Shown in pieces: positions 555-32,883 of a stretch of 40,109 nt of DNA. Within the stretch, counting starts at the first letter, position 1. Each line of letters begins with the position of its first letter. The stretch comes from Hydrolagus colliei (Eukaryota), in contig CM068769.1 in the NCBI GenBank assembly GCA_035084275.1, positions 496,001-536,109 on the forward strand. The letters are read 5' to 3'. The notes below the pieces were generated by a model. That model did no database searches. It was not told the origin of the DNA and saw nothing but the letters and a program-made list of their open reading frames with translations. A program made the position numbers and the translations under genes.

Positions 555-899
555 ATGTTTCTCTCTCCCATAAATACACAGTAAAATTACTTGACAATGT
601 ATTCTGTGAAGCGCTTTGAATCGCTTAGAGTAGACGTGAAAAGCGATATAGCGAATGCAAGTATTATTATCATTACTGCTGTTATTATCCACATGTCTTA
701 ATTCTAACAAACATGTATCACAATCTTCTATCGGTTGATTAATAAAAACATATAATACAGAGATAGTGATGCATTTCTTTTTCTTTAATTGTCTTGATAT
801 GAAGTAAATAAAGTGTAAGCTGTGGGGACAGTTAGCTTATGGTTTGTTACATGGTGTCTCACTGCTCTTTACTGATTCCCAGCGTTTGGTTGTGATGAG

Positions 900-938
900 G
901 GTTATTGTACGAGGCTTCCTATGATGTGTATCACTGTG
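900..938 (-). other. 23-bp-spacer recombination signal sequence of the supporting V
   Basis: Minus strand CACAGTG - 23 nt - ACAATAACC, directly after the V coding end. Confidence 0.93.
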
Positions 939-1234
939 GTGCAGACTGACTACACAGTGATACATAGCGGAGTCTGGTAGCTGCAGGCTGGCGATGGTGA
1001 AATGGCTGATTTTTTTGGCAGTGTCAAGAGAAGCAGAAATATGATCTCCAGTGGGGTTTCCTCCCTCTCCCAAAGGGCTTCTGTGGAGAAGGTATATCGG
1101 TGCCTCACCAGGGAACTGACAGTACCAGGAGACAATTAAATCCTGTCCACAGAATCCTGAGTATTGGCATTGTAAATCCACTCTCCCTCCAGCAATAGCC
1201 TTTATTTCAGGCGGTGACTGAGTAATTATCGATC
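939..1234 (-). CDS. TCR-delta V exon, leaderless 'supporting' V of a NAR-TCR cassette
   Basis: Acceptor ...ccacgtag|GA TCG (phase 1); SIITQSPPEIKAIAGGRVDLQCQYSGFCGQDLIVSWYCQFPGEAPIYLLH...ISHFTIASLQLPDSAMYHCVVSL; canonical Cys/Trp/Cys, extra Cys in CDR1; no leader exon found nearby; in frame with the J donor at 5824. Confidence 0.88.
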
Positions 1235-1799
1235 CTACGTGGAGGATATCACAGCATAGTGAGCATTGCAATGTCGTAGCATTGTACAGCAATGAAGGAG
1301 AACATTAGGAGAATTGTTTATATGCCAGCTCTTTGGGGCAACTGTCCAACTTTTCCCACTCCCATTGTTGCCCCATATTCTTGACACATTTTGCTTCTGC
1401 ATTACTCCACCTGTCCATTTCCACTTTAAAATGGATTGTTTAACATGCTTATGCAAGAATATCAGGGAGCGCGTTGCCGATTATCATAACTTTGAAATTT
1501 ATAACAAATTCTCTTGTTCTCCCGTTTGTTTCTTTTTTAAAAAAAACTTTAAAACACATGTCCTTTGATTACTGGCCAATGGAAACAGTTTCTATGCTCC
1601 ACTTTTATCAGATACTATTTTAACATTCATTGCGCTCAAGATAAATTGATCTCTTTGTATATGTCAATTGCTTCTTTGCTGTAACCATTCTATTAAATCG
1701 TCTTTCAATAATGTCCAAGACTTTAATATCCTTCTTACCCTGTCAATAAAAGACACTTTAGATCCACTTTTCATCTAAACCATACAGTTACTCTAATAA

Positions 1800-2230
1800 T
1801 AATACTTGCATTTGTTATAGCGCTTTTCATGTCCTCCAGCCGCCTCAAAAACCTTCAAAGAATATACTGTAAAGTGAATTGACTATACGTGAGTGGACGA
1901 AGCGCGGCACCCGAACAATAATAATACTATTATTACTGTTTTAATATAGGCGCTTTTCGCAACTTATCGACGTCACAAAGCGCTTCACAGAATACACTGT
2001 AAATTGGAATGATTCTATATTTGTGGGACAAACGCGGCAGCGAATTGCGCACAGCAGTGTTCCTCACAAACAGTCGTGGATTGGATTGACCAATGTATCT
2101 TTTTGTGGGATTTTTTCACGGATTATTATTAGACGTGTGGAGAAAGGTAACTTGCCCAAGGTTTCGCCCTAATCTTCCTGGATTCGAACACGGGTCTCAC
2201 GCTTGTAAGTGATTGCGATATCCACTGAGC
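1800..2230 (-). mobile_element. DeuSINE-like SINE copies (one partial, one near full length)
   Basis: Reverse complement of core GCGCAATTCGCTGCCGCGTTTGTCCCACAAATATAG...TGTGAAGCGCTTTG, with tRNA-like head (ttcgaacacgggtctc) near 2180-2230. Confidence 0.7.
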
Positions 2231-2590
2231 AAAAATCCACAATAAAATAGTTTGATTGATTCTATACGGGTTTGCTGTTGTAGATTGCACCCACTGAAGC
2301 CCTGGTTGTCTGTGATCATGGGAATGTTTAGCAGAGAATCAGATGTCGGTGTACACAGTTAACTCCGTTGAATTAAAGTTGAGTGAAATGGAATTCCCCT
2401 CTCTGAATGTCGTTACATTGACATCGCTGCTGGAGGAGGTGAATGAAGTCGCTGGCTTGTTTCCAAAATCAGTTTTGTCTCAGTCTGTTAGCCTCTAAAT
2501 GCAGTTTCATTTGTGCCAGAAGAAAACTGCTTTCCATAAAAAAGTGTTAAATAATTGCTTAAATATTTTTCTTTCTTTGTTTGTTCTTTT

Positions 2591-4878
2591 ATCTAGGGAA
2601 TAGTGACCACAATATCGTTAGATTCAGAATAATTATGGAAAGGGATAAGGAACGATCACAGGTGAGGACACTCAACTGGAAAAGGGCTAATTTCAATGAG
2701 TTGAGGTGGGACCTAGCCAAGGTGGATTGGAAAGAAAAATTGGCAGGTAAGACAACTAACGAGCAGTGGGCAGCGTTCAAAGAGGAGATAGTTCAGGCAC
2801 AGGTCAAAAGCATCCCCACAAAGGTGAAAAGTAAGGCATCCAAACCTCCCTGGATGACTAAGGAAATCGGGGCCAAAATCAAACAAAAAAAAGAGGCTTA
2901 TGATAAGTGTCAGGCTCAAAATTCAGAAGGGAACCAAGCAGAATATAGGAAGTGTAGGATAGAACTAAAAAAGGAAGTTAGAGGGGCAAAGAGACTGCAT
3001 GAAAAACAATTAGCGAGTAAGATTAAGGGGAACCCTAAGGTTTTTTACCAACATATTAAGAGTAAAAGGTTGGTCAAGGAGAGGGTGGGGCCAATTAGGG
3101 ACCTAGGAGGAAATCTCATTGTGGAGGCAGAGGGCATGGCTGATGTACTGAATGAGTACTTCGCCTCTGTCTTCACAAAAGAAAATGATACAGCCAATGC
3201 CATGGTATTAGAGGAGAGGGTAGGAGAAATGGATAGAATAATTATAACCAGAGAGGAAGTGCTAAAAAGGTTGACGTCGCTCAAGGTGGATAAGTCACCT
3301 GGTCCGGATGGGATGCACCCTAGGTTACTAAGTGAGGCACGGGAGCAAATAGCAGGGACTCTGGCCACGATCTTTCAATCTTCCTTGGACACAGGGGTCG
3401 TGCCAGAGGACTGGAGGATAGCTAATGTTACTCCCTTGTATAAAAAGGGGCAGAAGGACAAGCCTGGTAACTACAGACCAGTCAGTCTAACGTCGGTAGT
3501 GGGCAAAATTCTAGAGTCCATAATCAGGGACAAGGTAGATCTTCACTTAGAAAGATATAGGCTAATAAAGGACAGTCAACATGGATTTGTTAAAGGCAAA
3601 TCTTGCCTTACAAATCTGATAGAATTTTTTGATGAGGTAACGGAATGGGTGGATAATGGTAGCGCAGTTGATGTAGTTTACATGGACTTTCAAAAGGCAT
3701 TTGACAAAGTGCCACATGAGAGACTTATTAAGAAATTAAAGGCCCATGGCGTAAAAGGGACAGTGGCAGCGTGGATCCACAACTGGCTGCGAGACAGAAA
3801 GCAGAGAGTTGTAGTGAGCGGCTGTTTTTCAGATTGGAGGGAAGTGAGCAGTGGTGTGCCACAGGGATCGGTTTTGGGACCATTGCTGTTTGTAATCTAC
3901 ATCAATGATCTGGACTTGGGTGTACGGAGTACAGTTTCCAAGTTTGCAGATGACACTAAGTTAGGGAGAATAGTAAACAGTGAGGAGGATAGTAGCCATC
4001 TGCAAGAGGATATAGACAAATTGGTAAAGTGGGCAGACACATGGCAGATGAAGTTTAATGCAGAGAAGTGTGAGGTGATGCATTTTGGGAGAAGAAATGA
4101 AGGGAGGCAATATAGGCTAGATAGTACAATTTTAAATGGTGTGAAGGAACAGAGAGACCTGGGGATTTGTGTTAGTGACTCGTTGAAGGTGGCAGGACAG
4201 GTAGACAAGGCTGTTAAGAAGGCATATGGGATACTAGGCTTTATAAATAGGGGTATAGAGTACAAAAGTCAGGAAGTGCTGACTAACCTCTATAGGACTT
4301 TGGTGAGGCCTCAGCTGGAATACTGTGTTCAATTCTGGTCACCACACTACAGAAAGGATGTGAAGGCATTGGAAAGGGTACAACGAAGATTTACTAGGAT
4401 GGTGCCAGGATTGAGGGACTTCAGCTATGAGGAGAGGCTAGATAGGCTAGGGTTATTCTCTCTGGAGCAGAGAAGATTGAGGGGAGACCTAATAGAGGTT
4501 TATAAGATCATGAGGGGTTTCGACAGGGCAAATAGAGAAAAACTATTTCCACTCGTGGGTGAATCTGTGACTCGTGGTCACAGATTTAAAATAGTTTCAA
4601 GGCGCAGTAGAGGGGAGCTGAGGAGAAATTTTTTCACTCAGCGAGTTGTTCGAATCTGGAATGCATTGCCTGAAAAGGTGGTGGAGGCTGATTCGATAAC
4701 AACTTTTAAAAGGGAATTAGATCTTTATTTAGGAAGAACGGGTCTATTAGGCTATGGGGAGCGGGCAGGGCAATGGGATTGAATCGCTCTTTTCAAAGAG
4801 CCGGCACAGACTAGATGGGCCGAATGGCCTCCTTTTGTGCCGTAAAATTCTATGATTCTATGATTCTATGATTCTATG
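2591..4878 (+). mobile_element. CR1-clade LINE, 5'-truncated, uninterrupted reverse transcriptase region, (TTCTATGA)n tail
   Basis: ORF 2581-4782 with KSPGPDG, NYRPVSLTS, YMDFQKAFDKV, GVPQGSVLGPLLF, KFADD, LEYCVQFWSP; begins at GNSDHN at the end of the endonuclease domain; octamer tail 4849-4878. Confidence 0.96.
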
Positions 4879-4960
4879 TTTATTTGTTTGTTTATTTGTT
4901 TCCTTCTTTGATTCTTTCCGTGTTTCTTTCCGTGTTTCTTTCCGTGTTTCTTTCCGTGTT
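4879..4960. repeat. Simple repeats (TTTG-like, then 12-mer TTTCTTTCCGTG) running into assembly gap 4961-5171
   Basis: Direct reading; N-run of 211 nt follows. Confidence 0.9.
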
Positions 4961-5823
4961 NNNNNNNNNNNNNNNNNNNNNNNNNNNNNNNNNNNNNNNN
5001 NNNNNNNNNNNNNNNNNNNNNNNNNNNNNNNNNNNNNNNNNNNNNNNNNNNNNNNNNNNNNNNNNNNNNNNNNNNNNNNNNNNNNNNNNNNNNNNNNNNN
5101 NNNNNNNNNNNNNNNNNNNNNNNNNNNNNNNNNNNNNNNNNNNNNNNNNNNNNNNNNNNNNNNNNNNNNNNACTCTATCAAATCTATCTCTCTCCCCTTC
5201 CTCTCTCTAATTTACCTTAGATGCTTTCTACACGTGTATTTGCTTACATTTTGGCAAAATACCGTGTTTTCGTATGAATGAATAGTTAGTTGCTTGTTTC
5301 TGTAGAATATGATATAGTTCAGTTGGAACACTCAACTTCCATACAGAGGGGAAATTGGTGAACATTTCAAGTTATCGACCTCGCTTCAGACAAGCCTTGG
5401 TTTGAATAGAACAATTTATAGCATGTTTCATGTTGGAGACATTTCATTGAGAGTTGACTTCTCGATGGAATCGAGGCAGAGAGTGTATATAATATGGCAC
5501 TGGAACTCACGTATCCTGCATCAATCATTTGTCTGAATTTACAGATAAATTATGTATCTAGGCATGTTCCTTTTTAAACCATCTCCAGAAAAAGTGCAAT
5601 GGCATAAAACCAAAAATGGAGTTGATGCAGTTCATCTTAGCGGGAGCTGTCTAGTCTTTTAAAATCACACGCATATCTTTTGTTTTTCAAAAGGCGGTCA
5701 AGGGGAATGTTGGAAAGACACATTTGAAAATAACTAGGCAATTTGTTAAAATTAAGCAGTGCATTTTAGAAATTCAAGTAACAAATGTTTCGTTTTATTT
5801 CGGTAGAATTTATTCTCACTTAC

Positions 5824-5879
5824 GTTTTGTTACTGTGACTTTGGTTCCTGATCCATCTAAGGTATATTCCGCCCAAGGA
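5824..5879 (-). CDS. NAR-TCR J segment
   Basis: T CCT TGG GCG GAA TAT ACC TTA GAT GGA TCA GGA ACC AAA GTC ACA GTA ACA AAA C|GTAAGT = PWAEYTLDGSGTKVTVTK; DGxGT motif as in NAR-type J; phase-1 donor; preceded by RSS heptamer. Confidence 0.9.
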
Positions 5880-5918
5880 CACAGTAACACAGCTCTCGTA
5901 ATACAAGGCGCAAAATAT
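5880..5918 (-). other. 5' RSS of the J, best fit 23-bp spacer
   Basis: Plus strand CACAGTA (5880-5886) - 23 nt - GCAAAATAT (5910-5918); the 12-spacer alternative gives no nonamer (TAATACAAG). Confidence 0.7.
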
Positions 5919-6233
5919 ATTCTATCTGATTATGATTGAATACTGCCACGAAGTAAAAATAAATGGTAACAAGTTAGTTGTTAGTTTCTACATTTCTACC
6001 ACTTTGTCATCAAAATACATGCATCGTGTCCAAATTTGGTTTAATTTCAATGTAATTTCCACCCATCACGAACAAATTGCCTCGCCCAGAAAACATATAT
6101 CAGTAAATAATTCTAGAGTTGTCTGCTTCAAATGGCTAATTCAGAAAGCAAACGTCTGACAAATACAGCGCAATAAAACATGGAACAGCAATTAGTGTTG
6201 ATGTGCAATGTAATTCCATATAAACAGCCGCAC

Positions 6234-6306
6234 GGTATTTGTGCTGATGGATTCCAATGTGGCTTTCCAAATGGCCAGCACAGTATTTGCTGTCAACACA
6301 AATATA
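6234..6306 (-). other. NAR-TCR D segment (6262-6278, CTGGCCATTTGGAAAGC) flanked by two 12-bp-spacer RSSs
   Basis: 3' RSS on minus strand CACATTG-12-ACAAATACC (6234-6261); 5' RSS read on plus strand CACAGTA-12-ACAAATATA (6279-6306); lies between V and J. Confidence 0.9.
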
Positions 6307-6631
6307 GTATTTTGCAAAAACAGTGTAACACTATCTGGTCAAGTACAATTTATCAATAAATAATATCACGTGTACAAATATTTTGAAGATATTCCTATTC
6401 AGATTTGATATGTCGTCTATTCGATATACATAAACTGCGATATATGCCAATTGCACTCACATTCAACGTCTTTTAACACTACCTACATTTTCCTAAGTGT
6501 TCACCAATAATGCTTGTCAGTCGAAGAGAGTGTTAGTAAACACCATTCACATCTCAACACAATGGAAAATGTGCACTGAATTAATTGACAAAGTCACATT
6601 GACTGTGTGTTGTCTTTGAATTGACGAAGAG

Positions 6632-6669
6632 GCTTTTTGTATTGTTGGAAGCCTAGATGCAGCATCGTG
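6632..6669 (-). other. RSS of the NAR-like V (22-nt spacer, 23-type)
   Basis: Minus strand CACGATG - 22 nt - ACAAAAAGC. Confidence 0.8.
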
Positions 6670-6958
6670 TTGTCCCACAGGTAATGAGATGTACATCTGT
6701 AGGTAGCGCTGTCTGCTACTTGCAAATCATTAATTTCCAGCGTGGATGTCTTTGTTCCCACTTTGATAACATCAAACCGGCTTTCGCGAGGGATGGACAT
6801 CCAATCTCCTCCATTTGGAAACTGCCTTTGAAATGCCAAGCTAATGGAGCTGTAGTACCCACGATTCCCTTCTGCAAAGACGCAGTTGATGGTCAAAGAA
6901 TCACATTCTTCTTTGGTAATTGAAGTTGGTGTCTGTGTTAGGGTCTGACTGAAAACAT
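6670..6958 (-). CDS. IgNAR-like V exon (NAR-TCR distal V domain)
   Basis: Acceptor tgtttcag|AT GTT; VFSQTLTQTPTSITKEECDSLTINCVFAEGNRGYYSSISLAFQRQFPNGGDWMSIPRESRFDVIKVGTKTSTLEINDLQVADSATYRCTSHYLWD; QTP-S-TKE--SLTINCV, SI----RF and INDL-V-DS-TYRC match VNAR; short FR2-CDR2 region as in VNAR. Confidence 0.9.
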
Positions 6959-7332
6959 CTGAAACATACACAACATGACATCAGGTTAATACAGGCACAA
7001 CCCTGACCTGTACCATTAGCAGCAAATCCTGATGCTTGGCATGAGTTGAATTGATTTCAATTAATACAATAATTATATAATTATACTATCATGTTTATTT
7101 AATAAAATACAAGCAGAACAGATTAATCGATAGCAATCGGCTGCTTCTTTTCGCCCGCAAAATAAAAAACAAGTACGGTCACTTCGTCATGCAACATACA
7201 CTGTGAAGCGCTTTAAGACGTTTCATCGATGTGACAAGCCTCTGTATCAAAGCAAGCAATAATGTAAATTATTGTAAGGCACAGGGTAACGATGGTATTC
7301 ACTCGTGCCGTGTAATTGGAACAAAAACTCAC

Positions 7333-7375
7333 GTTGTAAGAAGTGGAAGGCGATGGAGACAGAGATGAGATGCAT
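7333..7375 (-). CDS. Probable leader exon of the NAR-like V
   Basis: ATG...MHLISVSIAFHFLQ C|GTGAGT, 43 nt, phase 1, splices in frame to 6958 giving MHLISVSIAFHFLQHVFS^QTLTQ; CRE-like TGACGTGA at 7494-7501. Confidence 0.6.
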
Positions 7376-7499
7376 TCTTTACTCGCTGGACAACTGAATG
7401 ACTGTGTGTAACACAGGGATGTTCTGTAGCAGCTTTAGAGACTAAATTATACTTGTATAGAATCTTTCCCGTCAGGAGAATCACATTATCGTGTGACGT

Positions 7500-8440
7500 G
7501 ATGGCCGGTGATAGCGTAATTGGGGTTGGAGGAGGGCGGGGCGAGAACCTAGTTAAGGAAAGGGTGTACACAAACTGTGTAAGTGGGCAGGGGGCAGAAG
7601 GGGATGATTTGGGGGTGATTGTTGAACAAAATGGGCAATTGGCGAGGGCAGTGATAGGAAAGTAAGTGAAGAGACTTCCAGAGGGTAAACGGCGGCGTGA
7701 TGTAGAGAGGGCCTTTGTTGTGAGTTGGTAAAGACAAATTAGCAACGACAGCAACAAAATTAGATTGATCGAGCACTCTTCACATCGGGAAGAGGTCACA
7801 ATGAGCTGTACATCGAGGTCGGGAACAGCGAATTAGGGCAAAGTATCAGTGTACTTGTTAGCGGAAGAAGAGTAGGAATGAGTGGGAGTGAGGAGGGGGA
7901 GTTGGAGAGAGTTGGGACGGGAGGGAGAGTGTCATGTGGCTTATGAGAGAGTTGGAAGAATTGGTAGAGACTTGGGAAGTGAAGGAGAGAGTTGGCAGAG
8001 GAGGGAGAGAGTTTGCAGGAAGAGAGTTTTGGAAATGAGGGAGAGAATTGAGACGATGAGAGAGGTGGAGGGAGAAGAAGAAAGTTGGGAGCGGAAGAAG
8101 AGTGTTGGGCGGGATGGGAGAGAGTTGTGAGTGGGAGGGAAAGAATTGGGAGGGGAGATAGCAGGGATTGGAGGGAATTGGGAGGGGAGGTAGAGAATTG
8201 TAGAGCAGGGAGAGAGTAGGGCATGGAGGCAGAGAGTTGGGAGGGGAGAGGAAGATATTTGGGAGGGGAGGGGGATTGTTTGCAAGGGAGCGCGAAAGGG
8301 TTGAGAGGGCAGATGATGTGTGAGGAGGTGAAACTAGAAACTAGGGTAAAGGCATTGTGTGTGCGTACAGTGGCTGGAGTCGTATGTGGGAGAGAGAGTA
8401 ATGGAGGGCTGCAGTGGGACACAGTGAAAGAAGATTTGGC
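7500..8440 (-). mobile_element. Decayed L2-like LINE internal fragment
   Basis: Pyrimidine-rich minus strand; fragments such as PKSSPSAPCPLTQ resemble the L2 ORF2 segment before the RT; broken frames. Confidence 0.55.
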
Positions 8441-10609
8441 AGCTAATGGATCAATTGAAACGTTTCAAAACTTATCAGCTGCTGTACCAAGTTAGACCGT
8501 TTGTAGCATAAATATTTATATTAAATCTCGGCCAGTCCATCTCTCTGCCTAAGTCTCTGTCTTTCAAATGGAGGGCAGTTGTGGAGAAAATTATTTACTG
8601 ATTTACCTAGCTGCAATTAGGAACCCGCTTATTTGTCGTTTGTCCAGTGGCTTTGGACGGTAAAAAGCGTCTTCAAAATAATATTAATAATTGCGTGATC
8701 GCTGATTCCACGATTGAGTGTTGGACCTCGATGTTCATAATAGTCGGCAAATTTTGTCCACCAAACACACAACAACAACTTATATTTATATAGCGCCCTT
8801 CAAGCCGGATGGCGTCTCAGAGCGCTTCAGAATAAAGGTATAAGTCAAGGACAGCGGGAGAAAGGTGACCGAATGTGACACATTCAATACTCTTGTAACC
8901 TGTCAAGCGCTTGGAGCCCTCTCGATCAAGTAATCAGCTGGTATATAAAATGTCAGCATTAGGACTATCATGTTGTTTATCCTAACAGAGTGTAATCCAC
9001 TTTCCAACTGGCATTTGTATTAAGTATGGAGATGGTTGAGGGGATGTGAGCAGGAGACGATCGCTTGTGGACATAGACGTTTCACATCATTTTTGGTTTC
9101 ATGATGAAGAGTGAGGAGAATGCAGTTTGCGGCTTTGTGTGTGAAAGTGGTGATATTATCGATGATTCTGGAGACAATTTATTGATGTTAATCATAATAA
9201 TCATTGGATGTCATATTGTGATTTATCACGTACTCGAGACGCCTCCAAGCGCTTCACAGAAAGTGCAGTATAACGGAGTGACTTTGTGTTTTGGGGGTGA
9301 AACATTACGCAATGATTCACTGCAGCATCTCACGGACAGCAGTATATGGAATGATCAAGTTCTTGGATAATATATATTGATTGCATTTTTTGAGCAAATT
9401 ATTATTTCATTTCTTTTCATTGAAATATTTATTTATTTTTGTTAAATTCTTACTTAATTATTCAGAATTGTTGTTGTGTTTTGGTTCACATGCACTTATT
9501 ATTTATTATTTAATGTATTTTTTTCACGTCTGTCTTTAATTATATTTTTATTTAGGAAACAATGACTTTGTTTCTGTGCTTATTCGCCTGATTCGTTTGT
9601 TCGCTTGTTTACTTTTCGAAGGATAATTTCCAGTGGAACATGACTCGCCAATCGACAAACACCGGGTTCCTATTTACTGTTTAGTAAAGGCACGTGTCAT
9701 AACGAAACTTTCTCTAGGTTTCGTCTAGCCTGTGAATCAAACGCAAGACCTCTCGCTTGTGAGATAGGACCTCTCGCCATCAAATTAGAGCACTCCACAT
9801 TATTTGTTAGATGGCGGCATCTAGTGATGGTTCAGGAGAATGACAGCGAATGGTTTGAGTTCATAGATTCATCGAATTTTACGGCTCAAAAGGAGGCCAT
9901 TCGGCCCATCTAGTCTGTGCCGGCTCTTTGAAAAGAGCGATTTAATCCCACTGCCCTGCCCGCTCCCCATAGCCTAATAGACCTGTTCTCCCTAAATAAA
10001 GATCTAATTCCCTTTTAAAAGTTGTTATCGAATCAGTCTCCACCACCTTTTCAGGCAATGCATTCCAGATTCGAACAACTCGCTGAGTGAAAAAATTTCT
10101 CCTCAGCTCCCCTCTACTTCGCCTTGAAACTATTTTAAATCTGTGACCACGAGTCACAGATTCGCCCACGAGTGGAAATAGTTTTTCTCTATTTGCCCTG
10201 TCGAATCCCCTCATGATTTTATAAACCTCTATTAGGTCTCCCCTCAATCTTCTCTGCTCCAGAGAGAATAACCCTAGCCTATCTAGCCTCTCCTCATAGC
10301 TGAAGTCCCTCAATCCTGGTACCATCCTAGTAAATCTTCTTTGTAACCTTTCCAATGTCTTCACATCCTTTCTGTAATGTGGTGACCAGAATTGAACACA
10401 GTATTCCAGCTGAGGCCTCACCAAAGTCTTATAGAGGTTAGTCAACAGTTCCTGACTTTTGTACTCAATACCCCTATTTATAAAGCCTAGTATCCCATAT
10501 GCCTTCTTAACAGCCTTGTCTACCTGTCCTGCCACCTTCAACGAGTCACTAACACAAATCCCCAGGTCTCTCTGTTCCTCCACACCATTTAAAATTTTAC
10601 TATCTAGCC

Positions 10610-11335
10610 ATCTCAGGGATCGTCCGGGCGGGCGGCGAGGACAGGGAGTGGTTGCTGGATGATTGTTGGATGATTGTTGGTTATTGTTTGTTGCTGTTTT
10701 TGTTGTTAATATTATTGCTTTTGTTGTTTATTATTGTTTATTATTGTTGTTTGATTCCCCCCACCCCTGCCCCCATCCTCTTCTTCCCTCACTCCCTTTC
10801 CCCACTTTCTCTCCTCCCTTCTCCCCTTCCCTCCCTCTTCCCTCTTCCTGATCTTGCCCCCACCCATCTTTCCCTCCCTCTTTTCCTTGCCCCCCTTTCT
10901 CCCCCTCTTCCTCCCTAACCCTAACCTATCGCACCTTTCCCTCCCTCTCCCCCCTTACCCTCTTTTCCCCCTTTCTCCCCTGGCCCCATTTTCGCGATTG
11001 TTTGTGGGGACACTGCTGTGCGCCATTTGGCTGCCGCGTTTCGCCCACAAGTATACAGTCGACTTTCCTGCCTTTCTTCCCACTGCCTCGACCCCTCCCC
11101 TTTTGCTTCTTTACCCCCTTTTGCCCCTAGTCCCACTTCCGTGACTGATTGTGGGACACTGCTGTGCGCAATTTGGCTGCCGCGTTTCGACCACTAATAT
11201 ACAGTTACTTTTCCTACTATTCTTCATCCTGCCCTGATCCCTCCCACCCTGCTCTTGTCCTACCTGACTGTACAGCGCCTTGGGATGTCCTCTCGACGTG
11301 AAAGGCGCTATATAAATGTAAGTTTTGTTGTTGTT
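10610..11335 (+). mobile_element. Non-autonomous L2-tailed element nested in the CR1
   Basis: Splits CR1 sequence ctatctagcc|atattgcctccc; two Deu-like cores (about 11020-11060, 11148-11200); ends gcgccttgggatgtcc...ggcgctatataaatgtaagttttgttgttgtt. Confidence 0.75.
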
Positions 11336-13966
11336 ATATTGCCTCCCTTCATTTCTTCTCTCAAAATGCATCACCTCATACTTCTCTGCATTAAACTTCA
11401 TCTGCCATGTGTCTGCCCACTTTACCAATTTGTCTATATCCTCTTGCAGATGGCTACTATGCTCCTCACTATTTACTATTCTCCCTAACTTAGTGTCATC
11501 TGCAAACTTGGAAACTGTACTCCGTACACCCAAGTCCAGATCATTGATGTAGATTACAAACAGCAATGGTCCCAAAACTGATCCCTGTTGCACACCACTG
11601 CTCACTTCCCTCCAGTCTGAAAAACAGCCGCTCATGACAACTCTCTGCTTTCTGTCTCGCAGCCAGTTGTGGATCCACGCTGCCACTGTCCCTTTTACGC
11701 CATGGGCCTTTAATTTCCTGATAGGTCTCTCATGTGGCACTTGTCAAATGCCTTTTGAAAGTCCATGTAAACTACATCAACTGCGCTACCATTATCCACC
11801 CATTCCATTACCTCATCAAAAAATTATATCAGATTTGTAAGGCAAGATTTGCCTTTAACAAATCCATGTTGACTGTCCTTTATTAGCCTATATCTTTTTA
11901 AGTGAAGATCTACCTTGTCCCTGATTATGGACTCTAGAATTTTGCCCACTACCGACGTTAGACTGACTGGTCTGTAGTTACCAGGCTTGTCCTTCTGCCC
12001 CTTTTTATACAAGGGAGTAACATTAGGTATCCTCCAGTCCTCTGGCACGAGCCCAGTGTCCAAGGAAGATTGAAAGATCGTGGCCAGAGTCCCTGCTATT
12101 TGCTCCCGTGCCTCCCTTAGTAACCTAGGGTGCATCCCATCCGGACCAGGTGACTTATCCACCTTGAGCGACGTCAACCTTTTTAGAACTTCCTCTCTGG
12201 TTATAATTATTCTATCCATTTCTCCTATCCTCTCCACCAATACCATGGCATTGGCTGTATCCTTTTCTTTTGTGAAGACAGAAGCGAAGTACTCATTCAG
12301 TACATCAGCCATGCCCTCTGCCTCCACAATGAGATTTCCTCCTAGGTCCCTAATTGGCCCCACCCTATCCTTGACCAACCTTTTACTCTTAATATGTTGG
12401 TAAAAATCCTTAGGGTTCCCCTCAATCTTACTCGCTAATTGTTTTTCATGCAGTCTGTTTGCCCCTCTAACTTCCTTTTTTAGTTCTATCCTACACTTCC
12501 TATATTCTGCTTGGCTCCCTTCCGAATTTTGAGCCTGACACTTTTCATAAGCCTCTTTTTTGTTGTTTTATTTTGGCCCCGATTTCCGTAGTCATCCAGG
12601 GAGGTTTGGATGCCTTACATTTCACCTTTATGGGGATGCTTTTGACCTGTGCCTGAACTATCTCCTCTTTGAACGCTGCCCACTGCTCGTTAGTTGTCTT
12701 TCCTGCCAATATTCTTTCCAATCCACCTTGGCTAGGTCTCACCTCAACTCATTAAAATTAGCCCTTTTCCAGTTGAGTGTCCTCACCTGTGATCGTTCTT
12801 TATCCCTTTCCATAATTGTTCTGAATCTAACGATATTGTGGTCACTATTCCCTAGATGCCACAGAAACCTGTTGAACTTGCCCTACCTCATTTCCGAAAA
12901 CTAGATCCAGCAAGGCTTCTTTCCTCGTTGGACTAGAAACATACTGATCAAGAAAGTTGTCCTGCACACACTTCAGGAATTCTTCTCCCTCCTTGCCCTT
13001 TACTCTACTGTTCTGCCAGTCTATGTTGGGTTAGTTGAAGTCACCCATTATCACTACTCTATTAGCTCTGCATTTCTCCGTGATATGCTTGCAGATCTGC
13101 TTGTCTATCTCCTCCCCACTATTTGGTGGTCTATAGTATACTCCTAACAGTGTAACTGCACCTTTTTTATTCCTCATTTCTAACAAGATATATTCGGTTT
13201 TTAGTCCTTCTTCCACCTCGTTCCTTTCTAAGGCAGTCACTGAGTCCTTAACTAAAATTGCCTCCCCGCCCGCTTTTCTCCCTTCTCTATCCTTCCTGAA
13301 TACATTATAACCAGGAATGTTCAACTCCCATTCCTACCCATGCTGGAGCCAAGTCTCTGTTACTGCTATAACATCATATCGCCTCGCAGCAACCTGAGCC
13401 TGCAGGTCACCAATTTTATTTCTCAAACTTCGTGCATTTACATACATGCACTCTAAAGCACAAATTACTTCCTCTGCACTTTTCTCCCGTCTTACCCTTA
13501 CCCCTGTCCTCTTTGTTCCCCTCCCGTATCTGAACAACTAATCAGTTTCCCACCCTCACCCCCAGGGATTAGTTTAAAGCCCCCCCAACAAAACTCGACA
13601 ACCTCACTGCAAAGAGATTGGTTCCAGCCCTGTTCAGGTGTAACCCATCCATTTTGTACAGGTACCACCTACCCCAGAATTGGTCTTGGTGGAGTGTCAG
13701 GCTCTAGGATGAAACTATCTAAGAAGCTCTCCCCATCCCTGATGCACCGCAATGTCTCCACCTGATACTCCAGCTCAGCTATTCTAAGCTGGAGCTTCCT
13801 CAGGTGCAGACATTTGCTGCAGATGAAGTCACCTTGGCTCTGGTTGCCCTCCATCAACTCCCACGTCCCGCATTCCTCGCACATCACATGCCAGGCCATT
13901 ATCTCGATTTACTTCCCTGGGATATATATAATCTGCACCTACTTCCTCCTCTGCACCTAATTCCCA

Positions 13967-15220: not shown

Positions 15221-15574
15221 AGTTTCTGTTCGAGCCCTGCAGTGTAATCAACCACTGTGGTGAGACTGAAGGCACAGTGATATACTGCGCTCTCAGATAC
15301 CAGCAGCTCAGAGATGGAAAATCTGGTGAAAGAACTAGATTCCTGCAGCTGAGCAGCGAAACGTTTTCCAAATCCTGTTCGTTTCACTAGATCGCCATCA
15401 CCAGAATATATCTCCGGACTGTAAACTCTGGATGTTTGTCTGGGTAATGTCTGCACCAGAAGAGATAGTAATTGCTTGCAGTAGTGGTGTAGGTACACAC
15501 AAGATAGGCAGCTTCTCCTTCTTTCGTAACCGCCGTGGCAGCTTTCTGACTGACATAATCAGCGTCACAGAATT
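15221..15574 (-). pseudogene. TCR alpha/delta V pseudogene (exon 15260-15574) with intact 23-RSS (15221-15259)
   Basis: EFCDADYVSQK...YLVCTYTTTASNYYLFWCRHYPDKHPEFTVRR / YSGDGDLVKRTGFGKRF...SESAVYHCAFSL; apparent 2-nt TA slippage near 15405-15410; RSS CACAGTG-23-ACAGAAACT. Confidence 0.9.
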
Positions 15575-16015
15575 CTGGAATAAACCAGGAAAAGCACGGC
15601 GAAATATTATTCACCAAATTCACAGTTTTTTAGCAGCAGTTGAACAAGAGTTGGCAATGCGTTTTACACAGCGTGTTACAGCATTGTTGAGACTCATTAA
15701 TGCGTTGTCCGGAATATGCAATCAAGTGATAAACTGTAGATTTTGTCGCCAGAACATGTCAGCCAGTTTTGCACATCAATGCTTCACAAAGACTTATGGG
15801 ATGAGTTACTGAACTATTATTGAAACATACATAAGGCATCATTAGCTTCGGAAAATTTATCTGCCTGTCTAGTAAACAAAGGTTAAAATCGAGAAACACA
15901 ACCTCCACAACCTCGCACCAACCCTACATATGTTACCTCCTATCCCCTTACTAACCTGAACTCCCCCTCAATCCGCTCAGCAGACTCTGGCCTGCTCCAA
16001 CTACTCCAACCAAGG

Positions 16016-17023: not shown

Positions 17024-17372
17024 AGTTTTTGGACGAGCTCTGCAGTGTAGTCAACCACAGTGGTGCGTCTAAAGGCACAGTAATACACTGCGCTGTCAGA
17101 TACCAGCAGCTCAGAGATGGATAACCTGATGGAAGAACTAGATTTCTGTAGGTGCGCAGAGAAACGGTTTCCAAATCCAGTGCCTTTGACTGGATCATTA
17201 GTCCAAGATTTACTCAGGACTATAAACTCGGGGTGTTTGTCTGGGTACTGTCTGTACCAGTAGAGAAGGTAACTGCTAGCAGTCGTGGAGTGTGTGGAAA
17301 CCAAATCGACAATATCTCTTTCTTGCTTAATCTCGGTAGCTTTCTGGTTGACAGGATCGGCGTCACAGAGTT
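17024..17372 (-). pseudogene. TCR alpha/delta V (exon 17063-17372), open frame but first Cys replaced by Ser; RSS 17024-17062
   Basis: ELCDADPVNQK...VDLVSTHSTTASSYLLYWYRQYPDKHPEF...SDSAVYYCAFRR; TCC where the paralog has TGT; RSS CACTGTG-23-CCAAAAACT. Confidence 0.82.
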
Positions 17373-21636: not shown

Positions 21637-21675
21637 TGTTTTTGTACGAGTCTCAGGCTGGTTCGCATCACTGTG
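21637..21675 (-). other. 23-RSS
   Basis: CACAGTG-23-ACAAAAACA. Confidence 0.93.
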
Positions 21676-21983
21676 TGGACGGAGAGCACAGTAATACACA
21701 GCGCTGTCAGACAACTCCAGCTGGGAGATAGTTAAACTGCTGAGTTTTGTCGAGGTCTGGAGTTCCATAGAGAATCGTTTATCAATAAAATCTGCTCTGT
21801 ATGCACTCCCACTGGAATGCTTCATGAGTATATACTGCGGTTGATTTCCCAGCGGTTCTCGATACCATTGCAAATAATAGCTGCTGAGAGATGTGTCATA
21901 CTGACATTCCATGGTGACACTTCCTCCTTCTTTCTCGGTCACTGGAGCCGCCTTCTGTGTCACAGAGTCCCCTTGGGCCAGGC
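21676..21983 (-). CDS. TCR alpha/delta V exon, apparently functional
   Basis: GLAQGDSVTQKAAPVTEKEGGSVTMECQYDTSLSSYYLQWYREPLGNQPQYILMKHSSG...RFSMELQTSTKLSSLTISQLELSDSAVYYCALRP; all canonical residues; acceptor tttcag. Confidence 0.93.
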
Positions 21984-26381: not shown

Positions 26382-26711
26382 CGTATTTGTACGAAGCCCC
26401 CATGCCATACCTACACCGTGGAAAGCTTGGCGCAGTAATACAGGGCACTGTCACCGATCAGGACGGTGTCAATTCTCAGTTCAAAATATTCTCTTATTCT
26501 ATGGACGGTGGAGTGAAAGCGAGCTGGAAAGTTAGGATTCCTGTCATCCTTCCCTGTATGTAGACAGGAGCGTTCCTTGATGCTTGTCTGTACCAGAAGA
26601 GGCTATAGGGATCACTTATTTTCTTCAAGGTGCAGGATATTGTCACGTCTTCTCCCTCTCGTATCAACAGATCAGCAATCGAATGTTTCCCCGTGTTCTG
26701 CAGGCTGTTGC
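26382..26711 (-). pseudogene. TCR alpha/delta V pseudogene (exon 26421-26711, frameshift in CDR2) with 23-RSS (26382-26420); not captured by the ORF track
   Basis: GNSLQNTGKHSIADLLIREGEDVTISCTLKKISDPYSLFWYRQASRNAPVYIQG / DDRNPNFPARFHSTVHRIREYFELRIDTVLIGDSALYYCAKL; RSS CACGGTG-23-ACAAATACG. Confidence 0.88.
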
Positions 26712-30919: not shown

Positions 30920-30958
30920 TGTTTTTGTACAGGATCCTCTTAGACACGCAGCACTGTG
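30920..30958 (-). other. 23-RSS
   Basis: CACAGTG-23-ACAAAAACA. Confidence 0.93.
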
Positions 30959-31241
30959 CTCTCTGCTGCGCAGAAGTACGTGGCGGTATCTGTCAATCGC
31001 GCGTCTCTCATTGTCAGTGTGCTGTTCTTCTCTTTTCTGTCAGCCAAAGCACTTATCCTCTCCTCCGCCTTGATCTCTCTACTTCCCTTCACCAGCAAAT
31101 GGATGGAGCCGTTTTCATACTGTTTGTACCATTGGAAGGCTGGGCTGAGTAGAGTCGTGTTGCAATCGATGGATACATTTTCGTTTTCATTCCCTGTCAG
31201 TATCTGAGGACTCTGTGACACTTCTCGTTCAGCCAGGACAC
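30959..31241 (-). CDS. TCR alpha-type V exon, apparently functional
   Basis: VLAEREVSQSPQILTGNENENVSIDCNTTLLSPAFQWYKQYENGSIHLLVKGSREIKAEERISALADRKEKNSTLTMRDARLTDTATYFCAAES. Confidence 0.92.
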
Positions 31242-32546: not shown

Positions 32547-32585
32547 AGTTTTTGTACGAGGACTCTGCCCTTCTGTAACAGTGTG
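32547..32585 (-). other. 23-RSS
   Basis: CACACTG-23-ACAAAAACT. Confidence 0.88.
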
Positions 32586-32883
32586 GGCTCCAGGGCACAG
32601 AGATACACGGCGCTGTCACTCACAACCACCCTGAGAATCTGCAAGTTAATTAGTTTCTTCCCCTTGTGCACCTCAGCCGTGAAACGGTCAGCAATTCCAA
32701 TAGCTTTATCTACCTTTCCCGAGGCATATATCCTGAGGACATACTGAAGAGCTCCATCGGGATGTTGCCTGTAGCACAATATAGTGTCTATGCTTGAAAC
32801 GTTCATTCTTATTGTCACGTTTTGTCCTTCAAGTTCTGTTATCTCAGGGGGGGTCTGGTATATGACAACACTCCCATTGGCCA
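32586..32883 (-). CDS. TCR alpha/delta V exon, open frame but lacking the first Cys and with Trp41 replaced by Cys (ORF-type or pseudogene)
   Basis: VANGSVVIYQTPPEITELEGQNVTIRMNVSSIDTILCYRQHPDGALQYVLRIYASG...RFTAEVHKGKKLINLQILRVVVSDSAVYLCALEP; leader not found. Confidence 0.75.

What the first reader, a model, noticed from the sequence alone, without database searches (positions are those of the whole stretch)
900..7375. Complete NAR-TCR cassette: antibody-type V-D-J spliced onto a leaderless TCR-delta V (two-V-domain receptor needing two rearrangements)
Seen: on the minus strand, leader (7333-7375), VNAR-like V (6670-6958), D (6262-6278), J (5824-5879) with a phase-1 GTAAGT donor, then a TCR V exon (939-1234) with a phase-1 acceptor, its own 23-RSS and no detectable leader. 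The J-to-V splice is in frame (…GSGTKVTVTK-R-SIITQSPP…). Established: NAR-TCR chains of cartilaginous fish carry an IgNAR-like V on a leaderless supporting V-delta, each built by its own V(D)J event. Inference: this is one germline NAR-TCR unit inside the TCR alpha/delta V array. D and J are invisible in the ORF track. The class is known; whether this cassette or species has been described needs a search.
Basis: partly seen in the sequence, partly recalled or inferred. Interest (0 to 1): 0.9.

Follow-up and report, generated by a model that had tools for sequence, protein, structure and literature searches.

The report
Germline NAR-TCR cassette of a chimaera
This is one unrearranged copy of the known two-V-domain "NAR-TCR" delta-chain gene of cartilaginous fish, from a chimaera related to but apparently distinct from the elephant shark; it is a clean example of a known receptor type, not a new kind.

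Summary
These are a leader (7375-7333), a NAR-type V (6958-6670), one D (6278-6262), a J (5879-5824) and a leaderless V (1234-939). The V has a 22-nt-spacer RSS, the D has 12-RSSs on both sides, the J has a 23-RSS and a phase-1 GTAAGT donor, and the leaderless V has a phase-1 acceptor and a 23-RSS.

All five published NAR-TcR hallmarks are present. In a tree the first V falls in the NAR clade but outside IgNAR. The second V is sister to the elephant-shark NAR-TcR-associated delta Vs.

Five gap-free cassettes from sharks and a sawfish have the same order. Where called, they share the RSS pattern and splice phases and an almost identical V-D-J spacing.

The 211-N gap lies inside the 4,589-nt J-to-V intron, 652 nt from the donor and 3,726 nt from the acceptor. 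It abuts the simple-repeat tail of a young antisense LINE. Frame is therefore not at issue, but physical continuity rests on the scaffold.

The genome is holocephalan and probably not Callorhinchus milii. Expression and function were not testable.

The parts
7333..7375 (-). Leader exon of the NAR V (MHLISVSIAFHFLQ plus 1 base; donor GTGAGT at 7332-7327)
   Evidence: It is hydrophobic and 10/14 identical to the C. milii leader MSLLGVSISFLFLQ (P0009).
6670..6958 (-). NAR-TCR-type V exon (phase-1 acceptor; a-b loop Cys; no FR2 Trp; short C'-C'' region)
6632..6669 (-). RSS of the NAR V: CACGATG, 22-nt spacer, ACAAAAAGC
6279..6306 (-). 5' 12-RSS of the D: TATATTTGT, 12 nt, TACTGTG
   Evidence: The spacer motif TGTTGAC is shared with the bamboo shark.
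6262..6278 (-). Single D segment, CTGGCCATTTGGAAAGC (17 nt)
   Evidence: It sits at the same position and has about the same length as the D in four shark cassettes.
6234..6261 (-). 3' 12-RSS of the D: CACATTG, 12 nt, ACAAATACC
   Evidence: The nonamer is identical to the bamboo shark's and differs by one base from those of the catshark and smooth-hound.
5880..5918 (-). 23-RSS of the J: ATATTTTGC, 23 nt, TACTGTG (weak nonamer)
5824..5879 (-). J segment (..EYTLDGSGTKVTVTK plus 1 base), followed by the GTAAGT donor at 5823-5818
   Evidence: The DGSGT motif is shared with NAR-TCR Js of other species.
1235..5823 (-). J-to-supporting-V intron, 4,589 nt as assembled
   Evidence: The same intron is about 1.9-4.6 kb in five gap-free cassettes.
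4961..5171 (.). Assembly gap (211 N) inside the intron
   Evidence: One side abuts a 12-nt tandem array (4897-4960); the other side is GA-rich low complexity.
2591..4878 (+). 5'-truncated CR1-like LINE inserted antisense in the intron (733-aa open RT ORF; (ATTCTATG)n tail)
939..1234 (-). Leaderless supporting TCR-delta V exon (phase-1 acceptor; CDR1 Cys; extra FR2 Cys in WYCQ)
900..938 (-). 23-RSS of the supporting V: CACAGTG, 23 nt, ACAATAACC
   Evidence: Its read-through translation HHSDTHHRKPRTITLITTK is identical in C. milii gene models.

Best explanation
This is one germline (unrearranged) NAR-TCR unit of a holocephalan, lying at the D/J/C-proximal end of a run of TCR alpha/delta V segments that all sit on the minus strand.

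Inferred mechanism, following the published nurse-shark model:
1. In a developing gamma/delta T cell, RAG joins the NAR V (22/23-RSS) to the single D (12-RSS on both sides).
2. RAG then joins that D to the J (23-RSS). The 12/23 rule forbids a direct V-J joint.
3. Independently, the downstream supporting V (23-RSS) is joined to TCR-delta D and J segments that lie beyond window position 1.
4. Transcription starts at the NAR V leader.
5. The rearranged NAR VDJ exon is spliced from the J's phase-1 donor to the phase-1 acceptor of the supporting V. That V has no signal peptide of its own and so can reach the membrane only as the second domain.
6. The supporting VDJ is spliced to C-delta.

The product is a three-domain delta chain. 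An unpaired VNAR-like domain sits on a conventional V-delta. It is probably tied to it by a disulfide between the a-b-loop Cys of the NAR V and the CDR1 Cys of the supporting V.

Shown here: the segments, RSS types, splice phases, diagnostic residues, phylogenetic placement, and the same architecture in other species.

Inferred: rearrangement, splicing, the disulfide, pairing with TCR-gamma, and function.
For: - Anatomy and coordinates.
- RSS pattern 22/23 | 12-D-12 | 23, plus a 23-RSS on the second V.
- The top 30 PDB sequence matches of the first V are all VNARs.
- FR2-to-Cys2 distance is 46 residues, against 47-48 in the IgNAR and NAR-TCR Vs compared and 53-59 in conventional Vs.
- The five hallmarks listed in PMC1845163 are all present.
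- Nearest proteins in 1.8 billion representatives are two-V proteins of C. milii and eight elasmobranchs.
- C. milii P0009 has the same ...KVTVTK-R-... junction onto its supporting V.
- Tree: NAR clade 98/93, IgNAR clade (100/99) excludes the window V, supporting-V clade 100/99, window V sister to C. milii supporting Vs 100/98.
- Five gap-free cassettes (L001, L003-L006) have the same order. A phase-1 donor and acceptor were both read in three of them.
- No credible leader lies in 3.7 kb upstream of the second V.
- No IgNAR or TCR C exon lies in the window.
- Neighbouring Vs are TCR alpha/delta-type.
Against: - No transcript evidence is available.
- The J-to-V linkage crosses an unread gap.
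- Several RSS elements are off-consensus: V heptamer CACGATG, D 5' nonamer TATATTTGT, J nonamer ATATTTTGC.
- The supporting V has an extra, probably unpaired Cys in FR2 (WYCQ where the 14 relatives compared have WYRQ, WYSQ, WYRL, WHSQ or SYRQ).
- A 2.3-kb young LINE sits antisense in the obligatory intron.
- The cassette could therefore be a recently disabled copy in a multigene family.
- The leader scan's positive controls were imperfect. Only the NAR V and two conventional Vs gave convincing leaders.
Confidence: 0.9

Rival explanations
1. It is the same kind of cassette but a non-functional (pseudogene or recently disabled) copy of a multigene family. It is neither rearranged nor expressed.
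For: - Off-consensus V heptamer, and weak nonamers at the D 5' RSS and the J RSS.
- An extra FR2 Cys in the supporting V.
- A LINE insertion in the intron.
- Five of the seven RSS-flanked conventional Vs in the window are defective.
- C. milii has at least six supporting-V paralogues.
Against: - Both V exons are open, with canonical Cys pairs.
- All four splice sites are good, and the ATG leader is intact.
- CAC is conserved at every coding-proximal heptamer end.
- The diagnostic Cys residues are retained.
- Introns of 4.6 kb occur in the catshark cassette too.
Confidence: 0.2
2. A scaffolding join across the gap links the V-D-J of one NAR-TCR cassette to the supporting V of another cassette, or hides extra sequence. 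Under this reading, the unit as drawn is not one physical unit.
For: - The gap at 4961-5171 sits in repeats.
- The last 507 bp of LINE before the gap is 100% identical to another copy in the window.
- The family is multicopy in holocephalans.
Against: - Strand, order and splice phases agree with five gap-free cassettes.
- Intron length, with or without the LINE, is inside their 1.9-4.6 kb range.
- The gap sizes (211 and 497) are specific estimates rather than a fixed placeholder, which suggests spanning reads. This last point is inference only.
Confidence: 0.1
3. It is an IgNAR (antibody) V-D-J cluster that merely lies next to an unrelated TCR V.
For: The first V's best solved-structure matches are IgNAR VNARs.
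Against: - It lacks the FR2 Trp and has the a-b loop Cys, both NAR-TCR features.
- It lies outside the IgNAR clade, which has 100/99 support.
- It has one D, not the three of IgNAR clusters (PMC4279169).
- No IgNAR C exons are in the window.
- IgNAR was reported absent from the C. milii genome (PMC3964593).
- The J donor is in phase with a leaderless V of the NAR-TCR-associated clade.
Confidence: 0.01

Closest known systems
NAR-TcR of Callorhinchus milii (elephant shark; Venkatesh 2007, PMC1845163; XP_007909367.1 = P0001; UPI0004576186 = P0009)
   Same: - Leader, NAR V with a-b loop Cys and no FR2 Trp, a J ending ..KVTVTK, and the same -R- junction codon.
- A leaderless supporting V with ..QYSGFCGQD.. 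in CDR1.
- A supporting-V RSS whose translation is identical.
- The window's supporting V is sister to the C. milii copies (100/98).
   Different: - Only 46-51% (NAR V) and 65-73% (supporting V) amino-acid identity.
- Conventional Vs are at most 75% identical to C. milii.
- Shared repeats and V flanks are 67-82% identical at DNA level, while copies of the same LINE within the window are 97-100% identical.
- So this is probably another holocephalan species.
- The window's supporting V has an extra FR2 Cys.
NAR-TcR of elasmobranchs (nurse shark, Criscitiello 2006; here the gene models and loci of Chiloscyllium, Scyliorhinus, Hemiscyllium, Mustelus, Pristis)
   Same: - Order L-V-D-J-supporting V on one strand, seen in all five loci.
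- RSS pattern 22-24 | 12-D-12 | 22-23, in the four loci where a D was called.
- A phase-1 donor and acceptor, both read in three loci.
- The DGSGT-type J motif.
- V-D spacing 383-392 nt and D-J spacing 370-386 nt, against 391 and 382 here.
   Different: - Elasmobranch NAR-TCR Vs form their own clade (99/96) that excludes the window's V.
- The linker is ..TVTA-DS.SL.. rather than ..TVTK-R-S..
- No DNA similarity outside the RSS, D and J.
IgNAR V (VNAR) of sharks
   Same: The same short single-domain V fold family. Shared motifs include QTP..TKE..SLTINCV and L.INDL.V.DS.TYRC.
   Different: IgNAR has the FR2 Trp, has no a-b loop Cys, has three Ds, and is followed by IgNAR C exons. It is an antibody, not part of a TCR chain.
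TCR-mu of marsupials and monotremes; VH-delta of frogs, birds and coelacanth (from PMC3457774 and PMC7615758 titles/abstracts, and general knowledge)
   Same: They work alike: TCR-mu also stacks an antibody-like V on a second V in one TCR chain.
   Different: They arose independently. Their Vs are VH-related. The second V of TCR-mu is pre-joined in marsupials. They are not members of the same family.

Membership tests
NAR-TCR (doubly rearranging TCR-delta of cartilaginous fish) | The N-terminal V is of the NAR single-domain type (short C'-C'' region; groups with NAR Vs) | tested here: met
   VNARs are the top 30 PDB matches. FR2-to-Cys2 is 46 aa, against 53-59 in conventional Vs. NAR clade 98/93.
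NAR-TCR (doubly rearranging TCR-delta of cartilaginous fish) | The NAR V has a typical leader peptide exon | tested here: met
   MHLISVSIAFHFLQ, GTGAGT donor, 374-nt intron.
NAR-TCR (doubly rearranging TCR-delta of cartilaginous fish) | A Cys in the a-b loop of the NAR V (criterion from PMC1845163) | tested here: met
   KEECDSLTINC. EC[QED] is present at this position in all 15 NAR-TCR Vs compared, and absent in all 6 IgNAR Vs.
NAR-TCR (doubly rearranging TCR-delta of cartilaginous fish) | The canonical Trp of WYRK is absent from the NAR V (PMC1845163) | tested here: met
   AFQRQ at that position.
NAR-TCR (doubly rearranging TCR-delta of cartilaginous fish) | Own D and J with RSSs that obey the 12/23 rule | tested here: met
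   22 | 12-D-12 | 23. The same pattern is seen in four shark cassettes.
NAR-TCR (doubly rearranging TCR-delta of cartilaginous fish) | The J ends in a splice donor that is in phase with the acceptor of the supporting V | tested here: met
   Both are phase 1, and the product reads ..KVTVTK-R-SIITQ... Both sites were read as phase 1 in L001, L005 and L006.
NAR-TCR (doubly rearranging TCR-delta of cartilaginous fish) | The supporting delta V lacks a leader | tested here: met
   The exon begins 2-3 codons before ITQSPP, whereas conventional V exons carry 4-6 leader codons. No hydrophobic ATG exon with a usable phase-1 donor lies within 3.7 kb. A leader hidden in the gap cannot be excluded.
NAR-TCR (doubly rearranging TCR-delta of cartilaginous fish) | A conserved Cys in CDR1 of the supporting V | tested here: met
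   QYSGFCGQD. YSG.C is seen in 12 of the 14 supporting Vs compared.
NAR-TCR (doubly rearranging TCR-delta of cartilaginous fish) | The supporting V belongs to the NAR-TCR-associated delta-V lineage and has its own 23-RSS | tested here: met
   Clade support 100/99. RSS CACAGTG-23-ACAATAACC.
NAR-TCR (doubly rearranging TCR-delta of cartilaginous fish) | It lies in the TCR alpha/delta locus, upstream of D-delta, J-delta and C-delta | tested here: inconclusive
   It is flanked upstream by TCR alpha/delta-type Vs on the same strand. The window ends 938 nt after the supporting V, so no delta D, J or C is in view.
NAR-TCR (doubly rearranging TCR-delta of cartilaginous fish) | Two independent V(D)J joints and one three-domain transcript in T cells | not testable with these tools
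   This needs thymus or spleen RNA or DNA from this species.
IgNAR heavy-chain cluster | FR2 Trp; three D segments; IgNAR C exons downstream of the J | tested here: not met
   No Trp. One D (three Ds are expected per PMC4279169). No C exons. Excluded from the IgNAR clade.

The most novel reading that the evidence does not exclude
The cassette may be the first germline NAR-TCR unit seen in a chimaera outside Callorhinchus. An early Southern blot in a different chimaera had suggested that the family was absent from chimaeras.

Its V-D and D-J distances (391 and 382 nt) match those of four sharks (383-392 and 370-386 nt). The overall V-J distance (790 nt) matches all five elasmobranch cassettes, sawfish included (769-798 nt). 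The spacer sequence itself has diverged completely over about 400 million years.

That pattern would mean the spacing itself is under selection. Possible reasons are nucleosome phasing or RAG synapsis within the mini-cassette.
Probability: 0.3. Interest if true: 0.5.

Novelty: new member of a known kind. Interest (0 to 1): 0.3.

Why it matters
NAR-TCR is the clearest natural case of an antibody-like single-domain V fused onto a T-cell receptor. It is also central to the argument that the IgNAR V arose in a TCR context (PMC3964593, PMC12227049).

A clean germline cassette from a second holocephalan lineage adds a deep calibration point. It shows that the diagnostic residues, the RSS pattern, the splice phases and even the segment spacing predate the chimaera-elasmobranch split.

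It does not change the picture. The class, its mechanism and its presence in holocephalans are already published.

Tried and rejected
- A word-indexed protein search with the NAR V alone found nothing, which reflects the index limit and not absence. The exhaustive HMMER search and a search with the conceptual spliced product did work.
- The original NAR-TcR paper (PMC1458790) and the Ott 2021 review (PMC7909615) are not held. The defining features were taken from PMC1845163 instead.
- P0009 has no contig on record, so no C. milii NAR-TCR locus could be fetched. A C. milii conventional-V contig (L002) was used only for species comparison.
- PDB matches of the supporting V are dominated by scFv constructs and do not discriminate TCR from Ig. 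The tree was used instead.
- ARAGORN and Rfam found nothing in the window.
- The leader scan's positive controls were weak. A convincing leader was found only for the NAR V, V30958 and V32585. 'No leader' therefore also rests on where the exon starts and on the orthologues.
- A second D was looked for in the window and not found. A possible extra D in the bamboo shark (10719-10738) has no counterpart here.
- Structure prediction was not run, because the tool returns no coordinates and so could not test the proposed interdomain disulfide.
- The gap was not filled or looked up anywhere.

Full report
**1. Observation**

I read 800-7500 on the minus strand and cut out each claimed element.

- The leader runs 7375-7333. 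It encodes MHLISVSIAFHFLQ plus one base and is followed by GTGAGT.
- After a 374-nt intron ending tgtatgtttcag, the V exon runs 6958-6670. It is open and has both canonical cysteines.
- The V exon is followed by CACGATG, a 22-nt spacer and ACAAAAAGC.
- A relaxed scan for recombination signals between V and J finds exactly one segment flanked on both sides. This is the 17-nt D at 6278-6262.
- The D has TATATTTGT-12-TACTGTG on its 5' side and CACATTG-12-ACAAATACC on its 3' side.
- The J (5879-5824) is preceded by ATATTTTGC-23-TACTGTG. It encodes ..EYTLDGSGTKVTVTK plus one base and is followed by a consensus GTAAGT donor.
- The second V exon (1234-939) begins right after ccacgtag, with two bases that complete the split codon. 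The spliced reading is ...KVTVTK-R-SIITQSPP...
- The second V exon ends at CACAGTG-23-ACAATAACC.

The pattern 22/23 | 12-D-12 | 23 obeys the 12/23 rule and forbids a direct V-J joint.

**2. The assembly gap**

The gap is 4961-5171, 211 N. It lies wholly inside the 4,589-nt intron between the J donor and the second V's acceptor. It is 652 nt from the donor and 3,726 nt from the acceptor.

No exon abuts it. The only ORFs that cross it are translations of a tandem repeat. Frame across the gap is therefore not an issue, because the frame is fixed by two phase-1 splice sites.

On the V side the gap abuts a 12-nt tandem array at 4897-4960. That array follows the (ATTCTATG)n tail of a 5'-truncated CR1-like LINE at 2591-4878, on the plus strand and so antisense to the gene. 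The LINE has a 733-aa open reverse-transcriptase ORF. On the J side the flank is GA-rich low complexity. So the gap is an unresolved simple repeat.

Continuity cannot be proven here. Three things argue for it:
- Both flanks have the strand and order seen in five gap-free cassettes of other species.
- The intron length is inside their range (section 5).
- The non-round gap sizes in the window (211 and 497) suggest estimates from spanning reads. This last point is inference.

I did not look up or fill the gap.

**3. What the first V is**

Against all PDB chains, the top 30 matches are shark VNAR domains (E 1.7e-12 to 2.5e-6), ahead of every conventional antibody V. Pfam gives only a borderline V-set match (25.7 bits, just under the 26-bit gathering threshold).

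The distance from the FR2 motif to the second Cys is 46 residues. It is 47-48 in the IgNAR and NAR-TCR Vs compared, and 53-59 in the conventional Vs of the window. So the domain has the short C'-C'' region of NAR domains.

PMC1845163 states what separates NAR-TcR V from IgNAR V: a leader, a Cys in the a-b loop, and loss of the Trp of WYRK. The window has KEECDSLTINC and AFQRQ.

In my collection of domains, all 15 NAR-TCR Vs have EC[QED] and F/L in place of W. All 6 IgNAR Vs have E(T/A)GES or DIGES, and W.

An exhaustive HMMER search of 1.84 billion representatives returned 51 proteins at E <= 0.001. I looked up ten of the best. They are all chondrichthyan: Callorhinchus milii and eight elasmobranch species, plus one unnamed MetaClust entry (P0009) that groups with the C. 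milii supporting Vs. All ten carry a NAR V followed by a second V.

**4. What the second V is**

It is 65-73% identical to a tight family of C. milii V domains. Four of the five C. milii copies used in the tree have ..QYSG(F/I)CGQD.. in CDR1. All five carry an RSS that translates identically (HHSDTHHRKPRTITLIT..).

PMC1845163 gives the hallmarks of NAR-TcR-associated delta Vs as no leader and a Cys in CDR1. The Cys is there (SGFCGQ).

For the leader there are two lines of evidence:
- The exon starts only 2-3 codons before ITQSPP. Conventional V exons in the window carry 4-6 leader codons after their acceptor.
- A scan of 3.7 kb upstream finds no hydrophobic ATG exon with a usable phase-1 donor. 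The only candidates lie inside the antisense LINE and have poor donors.

The positive controls for this scan were imperfect, so I also rely on the orthologues.

One oddity: FR2 reads WYCQ, where the 14 relatives compared have WYRQ, WYSQ, WYRL, WHSQ or SYRQ, none with a Cys. This is an extra, probably unpaired Cys.

**5. Tree and orthologous loci**

I built a maximum-likelihood tree of 43 V domains.
- The window's first V falls inside the NAR clade (98/93).
- It falls outside the IgNAR clade (100/99) and outside the elasmobranch NAR-TCR clade (99/96).
- It sits in an unresolved group with the C. milii NAR-TCR Vs.
- The second V is sister to five C. milii supporting Vs (100/98), inside an all-species supporting-V clade (100/99).

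I fetched five gap-free genomic cassettes and mapped them. Each has one NAR V, then a J, then a supporting V, all on one strand.

A D flanked by 12-RSSs was called in four of the five, but not in the sawfish. Both the phase-1 donor and the phase-1 acceptor were read in three (bamboo shark, epaulette shark, smooth-hound). The scan found only the donor in the catshark and only the acceptor in the sawfish.

| Cassette | V-D (nt) | D-J (nt) | V-J (nt) | J-to-supporting-V intron |
|---|---|---|---|---|
| Window | 391 | 382 | 790 | 4,589 nt (includes 211 N and a 2.3-kb LINE) |
| Chiloscyllium | 392 | 386 | 794 | 2,788 nt |
| Scyliorhinus | 384 | 370 | 769 | about 4.6 kb |
| Hemiscyllium | 383 | 378 | 777 | 2,455 nt |
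| Mustelus | 392 | 376 | 785 | 2,418 nt |
| Pristis | D not called | D not called | 798 | about 1.9 kb |

The two approximate intron values are estimated from motif positions, because the scan did not report them. Without the LINE, the window's intron would be about 2.3 kb.

An alignment of the window's V-D-J interval with the bamboo shark's shows conservation only at the RSSs, the D and the J.

**6. Context**

All other V segments of the window are on the same strand with 23-RSSs. They lie at about 15.3, 17.1, 21.7, 26.4, 31.0, 32.6 and 35.8 kb, with a partial one at 37.9 kb.

Two intact ones find C. milii V genes first. They also find proteins named T cell receptor alpha chain or alpha variable.

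No IgNAR or TCR constant exon is in the window. The cassette is thus the last unit before the low-coordinate end of the window. The delta D, J and C segments would lie beyond that end.

**7. Species**

- No protein is more than 75% identical to any V of the window.
- Against a C. milii TCR-V contig (L002), 8.8 kb of the window aligns at 67-82% DNA identity. The aligned parts include the same LINE family at 72%.
- Copies of that LINE within the window are 97-100% identical to each other.
- Against the bamboo-shark locus there is no DNA hit at all.

So the genome is holocephalan and most likely not C. milii. Chimaerids diverged from Callorhinchus about 187 million years ago (PMC12952989). I cannot name the species.

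**8. Mechanism**

This follows the published model (PMC1845163, PMC5931798, PMC12227049). There are two independent RAG-mediated assemblies on one chromosome:
- NAR V-D-J within the cassette.
- Supporting V to delta D and J segments downstream.

One transcript from the NAR leader then splices J to the leaderless V and on to C-delta. The result is a three-domain delta chain with an unpaired VNAR-like tip. The literature proposes that the a-b loop Cys and the CDR1 Cys form an interdomain disulfide. Both residues are present here, but the bond is not tested.

**9. Rivals**

- A disabled copy (about 0.2). This rests on the off-consensus RSS elements, the extra Cys, the LINE in the intron and the many pseudogene neighbours.
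- A scaffold mis-join across the gap (about 0.1).
- An IgNAR cluster (about 0.01). It is rejected by four tested features.

**10. Verdict**

The class, its mechanism and its presence in holocephalans are published, so this is a new member of a known kind.

The only mildly new points are the likely non-Callorhinchus source and the near-invariant V-D-J spacing across the chimaera-elasmobranch split.

Noticed in passing
window 5880-6669; L001, L003, L004, L005, L006: V-D and D-J distances in NAR-TCR cassettes are almost invariant: 383-392 nt and 370-386 nt in the window and four sharks. The V-J distance is 769-798 nt in all six cassettes, including a sawfish. The spacer sequence is not conserved, and the downstream intron varies from 1.9 to 4.6 kb.
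   Followed up: partly
window 2591-4878 (+), 9861-12857 (-), 37128-37634 (+): There are three copies of one young CR1-like LINE family with an (ATTCTATG)n tail. The intronic copy has a 733-aa open RT ORF. It is 97% identical to the second copy and 100% identical over 507 bp to the third. The same family in C. milii is only about 72% identical.
   Followed up: partly
window 1093-1104 (minus strand, codon TGT in TGG TAC TGT CAG): The supporting V reads WYCQ in FR2, where none of the 14 relatives compared has a Cys. This is an extra, probably unpaired cysteine. It could be an allele, a sequencing error or a defect.
   Followed up: partly
window 15259-15575, 17062-17372, 26420-26711, 32585-32883, 35806-36101: Five of the seven RSS-flanked conventional alpha/delta-type Vs look defective. 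15259 and 26420 have frameshifts or stops, 35806 has an in-frame stop, and 17062 and 32585 lack the first canonical Cys. The Vs at 21675-21983 and 30958-31241 look intact. A V fragment lies at 37843-37992.
   Followed up: partly
window 606, 1988 (-), 7203, 20439 (-): A short interspersed repeat with the core GTGAAGCGCTTT occurs at four places. One copy is in the J-to-V intron and one is in the leader intron of the NAR V. Related copies in the C. milii contig are 70-82% identical.
   Followed up: no
window 7904-8279: A GA-rich array of about 20-nt units (13 copies of GGAGAGAGTTGGGAGGGGAG-like sequence) lies about 530 nt upstream of the NAR V leader.
   Followed up: no
window 39501-39997: A second assembly gap (497 N) sits inside a tandem repeat array. 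It is far from the finding.
   Followed up: no
L001 10719-10738: The bamboo-shark cassette has a possible extra D (TTGTTTTGT-12-CAATGTG | 20 nt | CACAGTT-11-GCAAAAATT) upstream of the conserved D. No counterpart was found in the window.
   Followed up: partly
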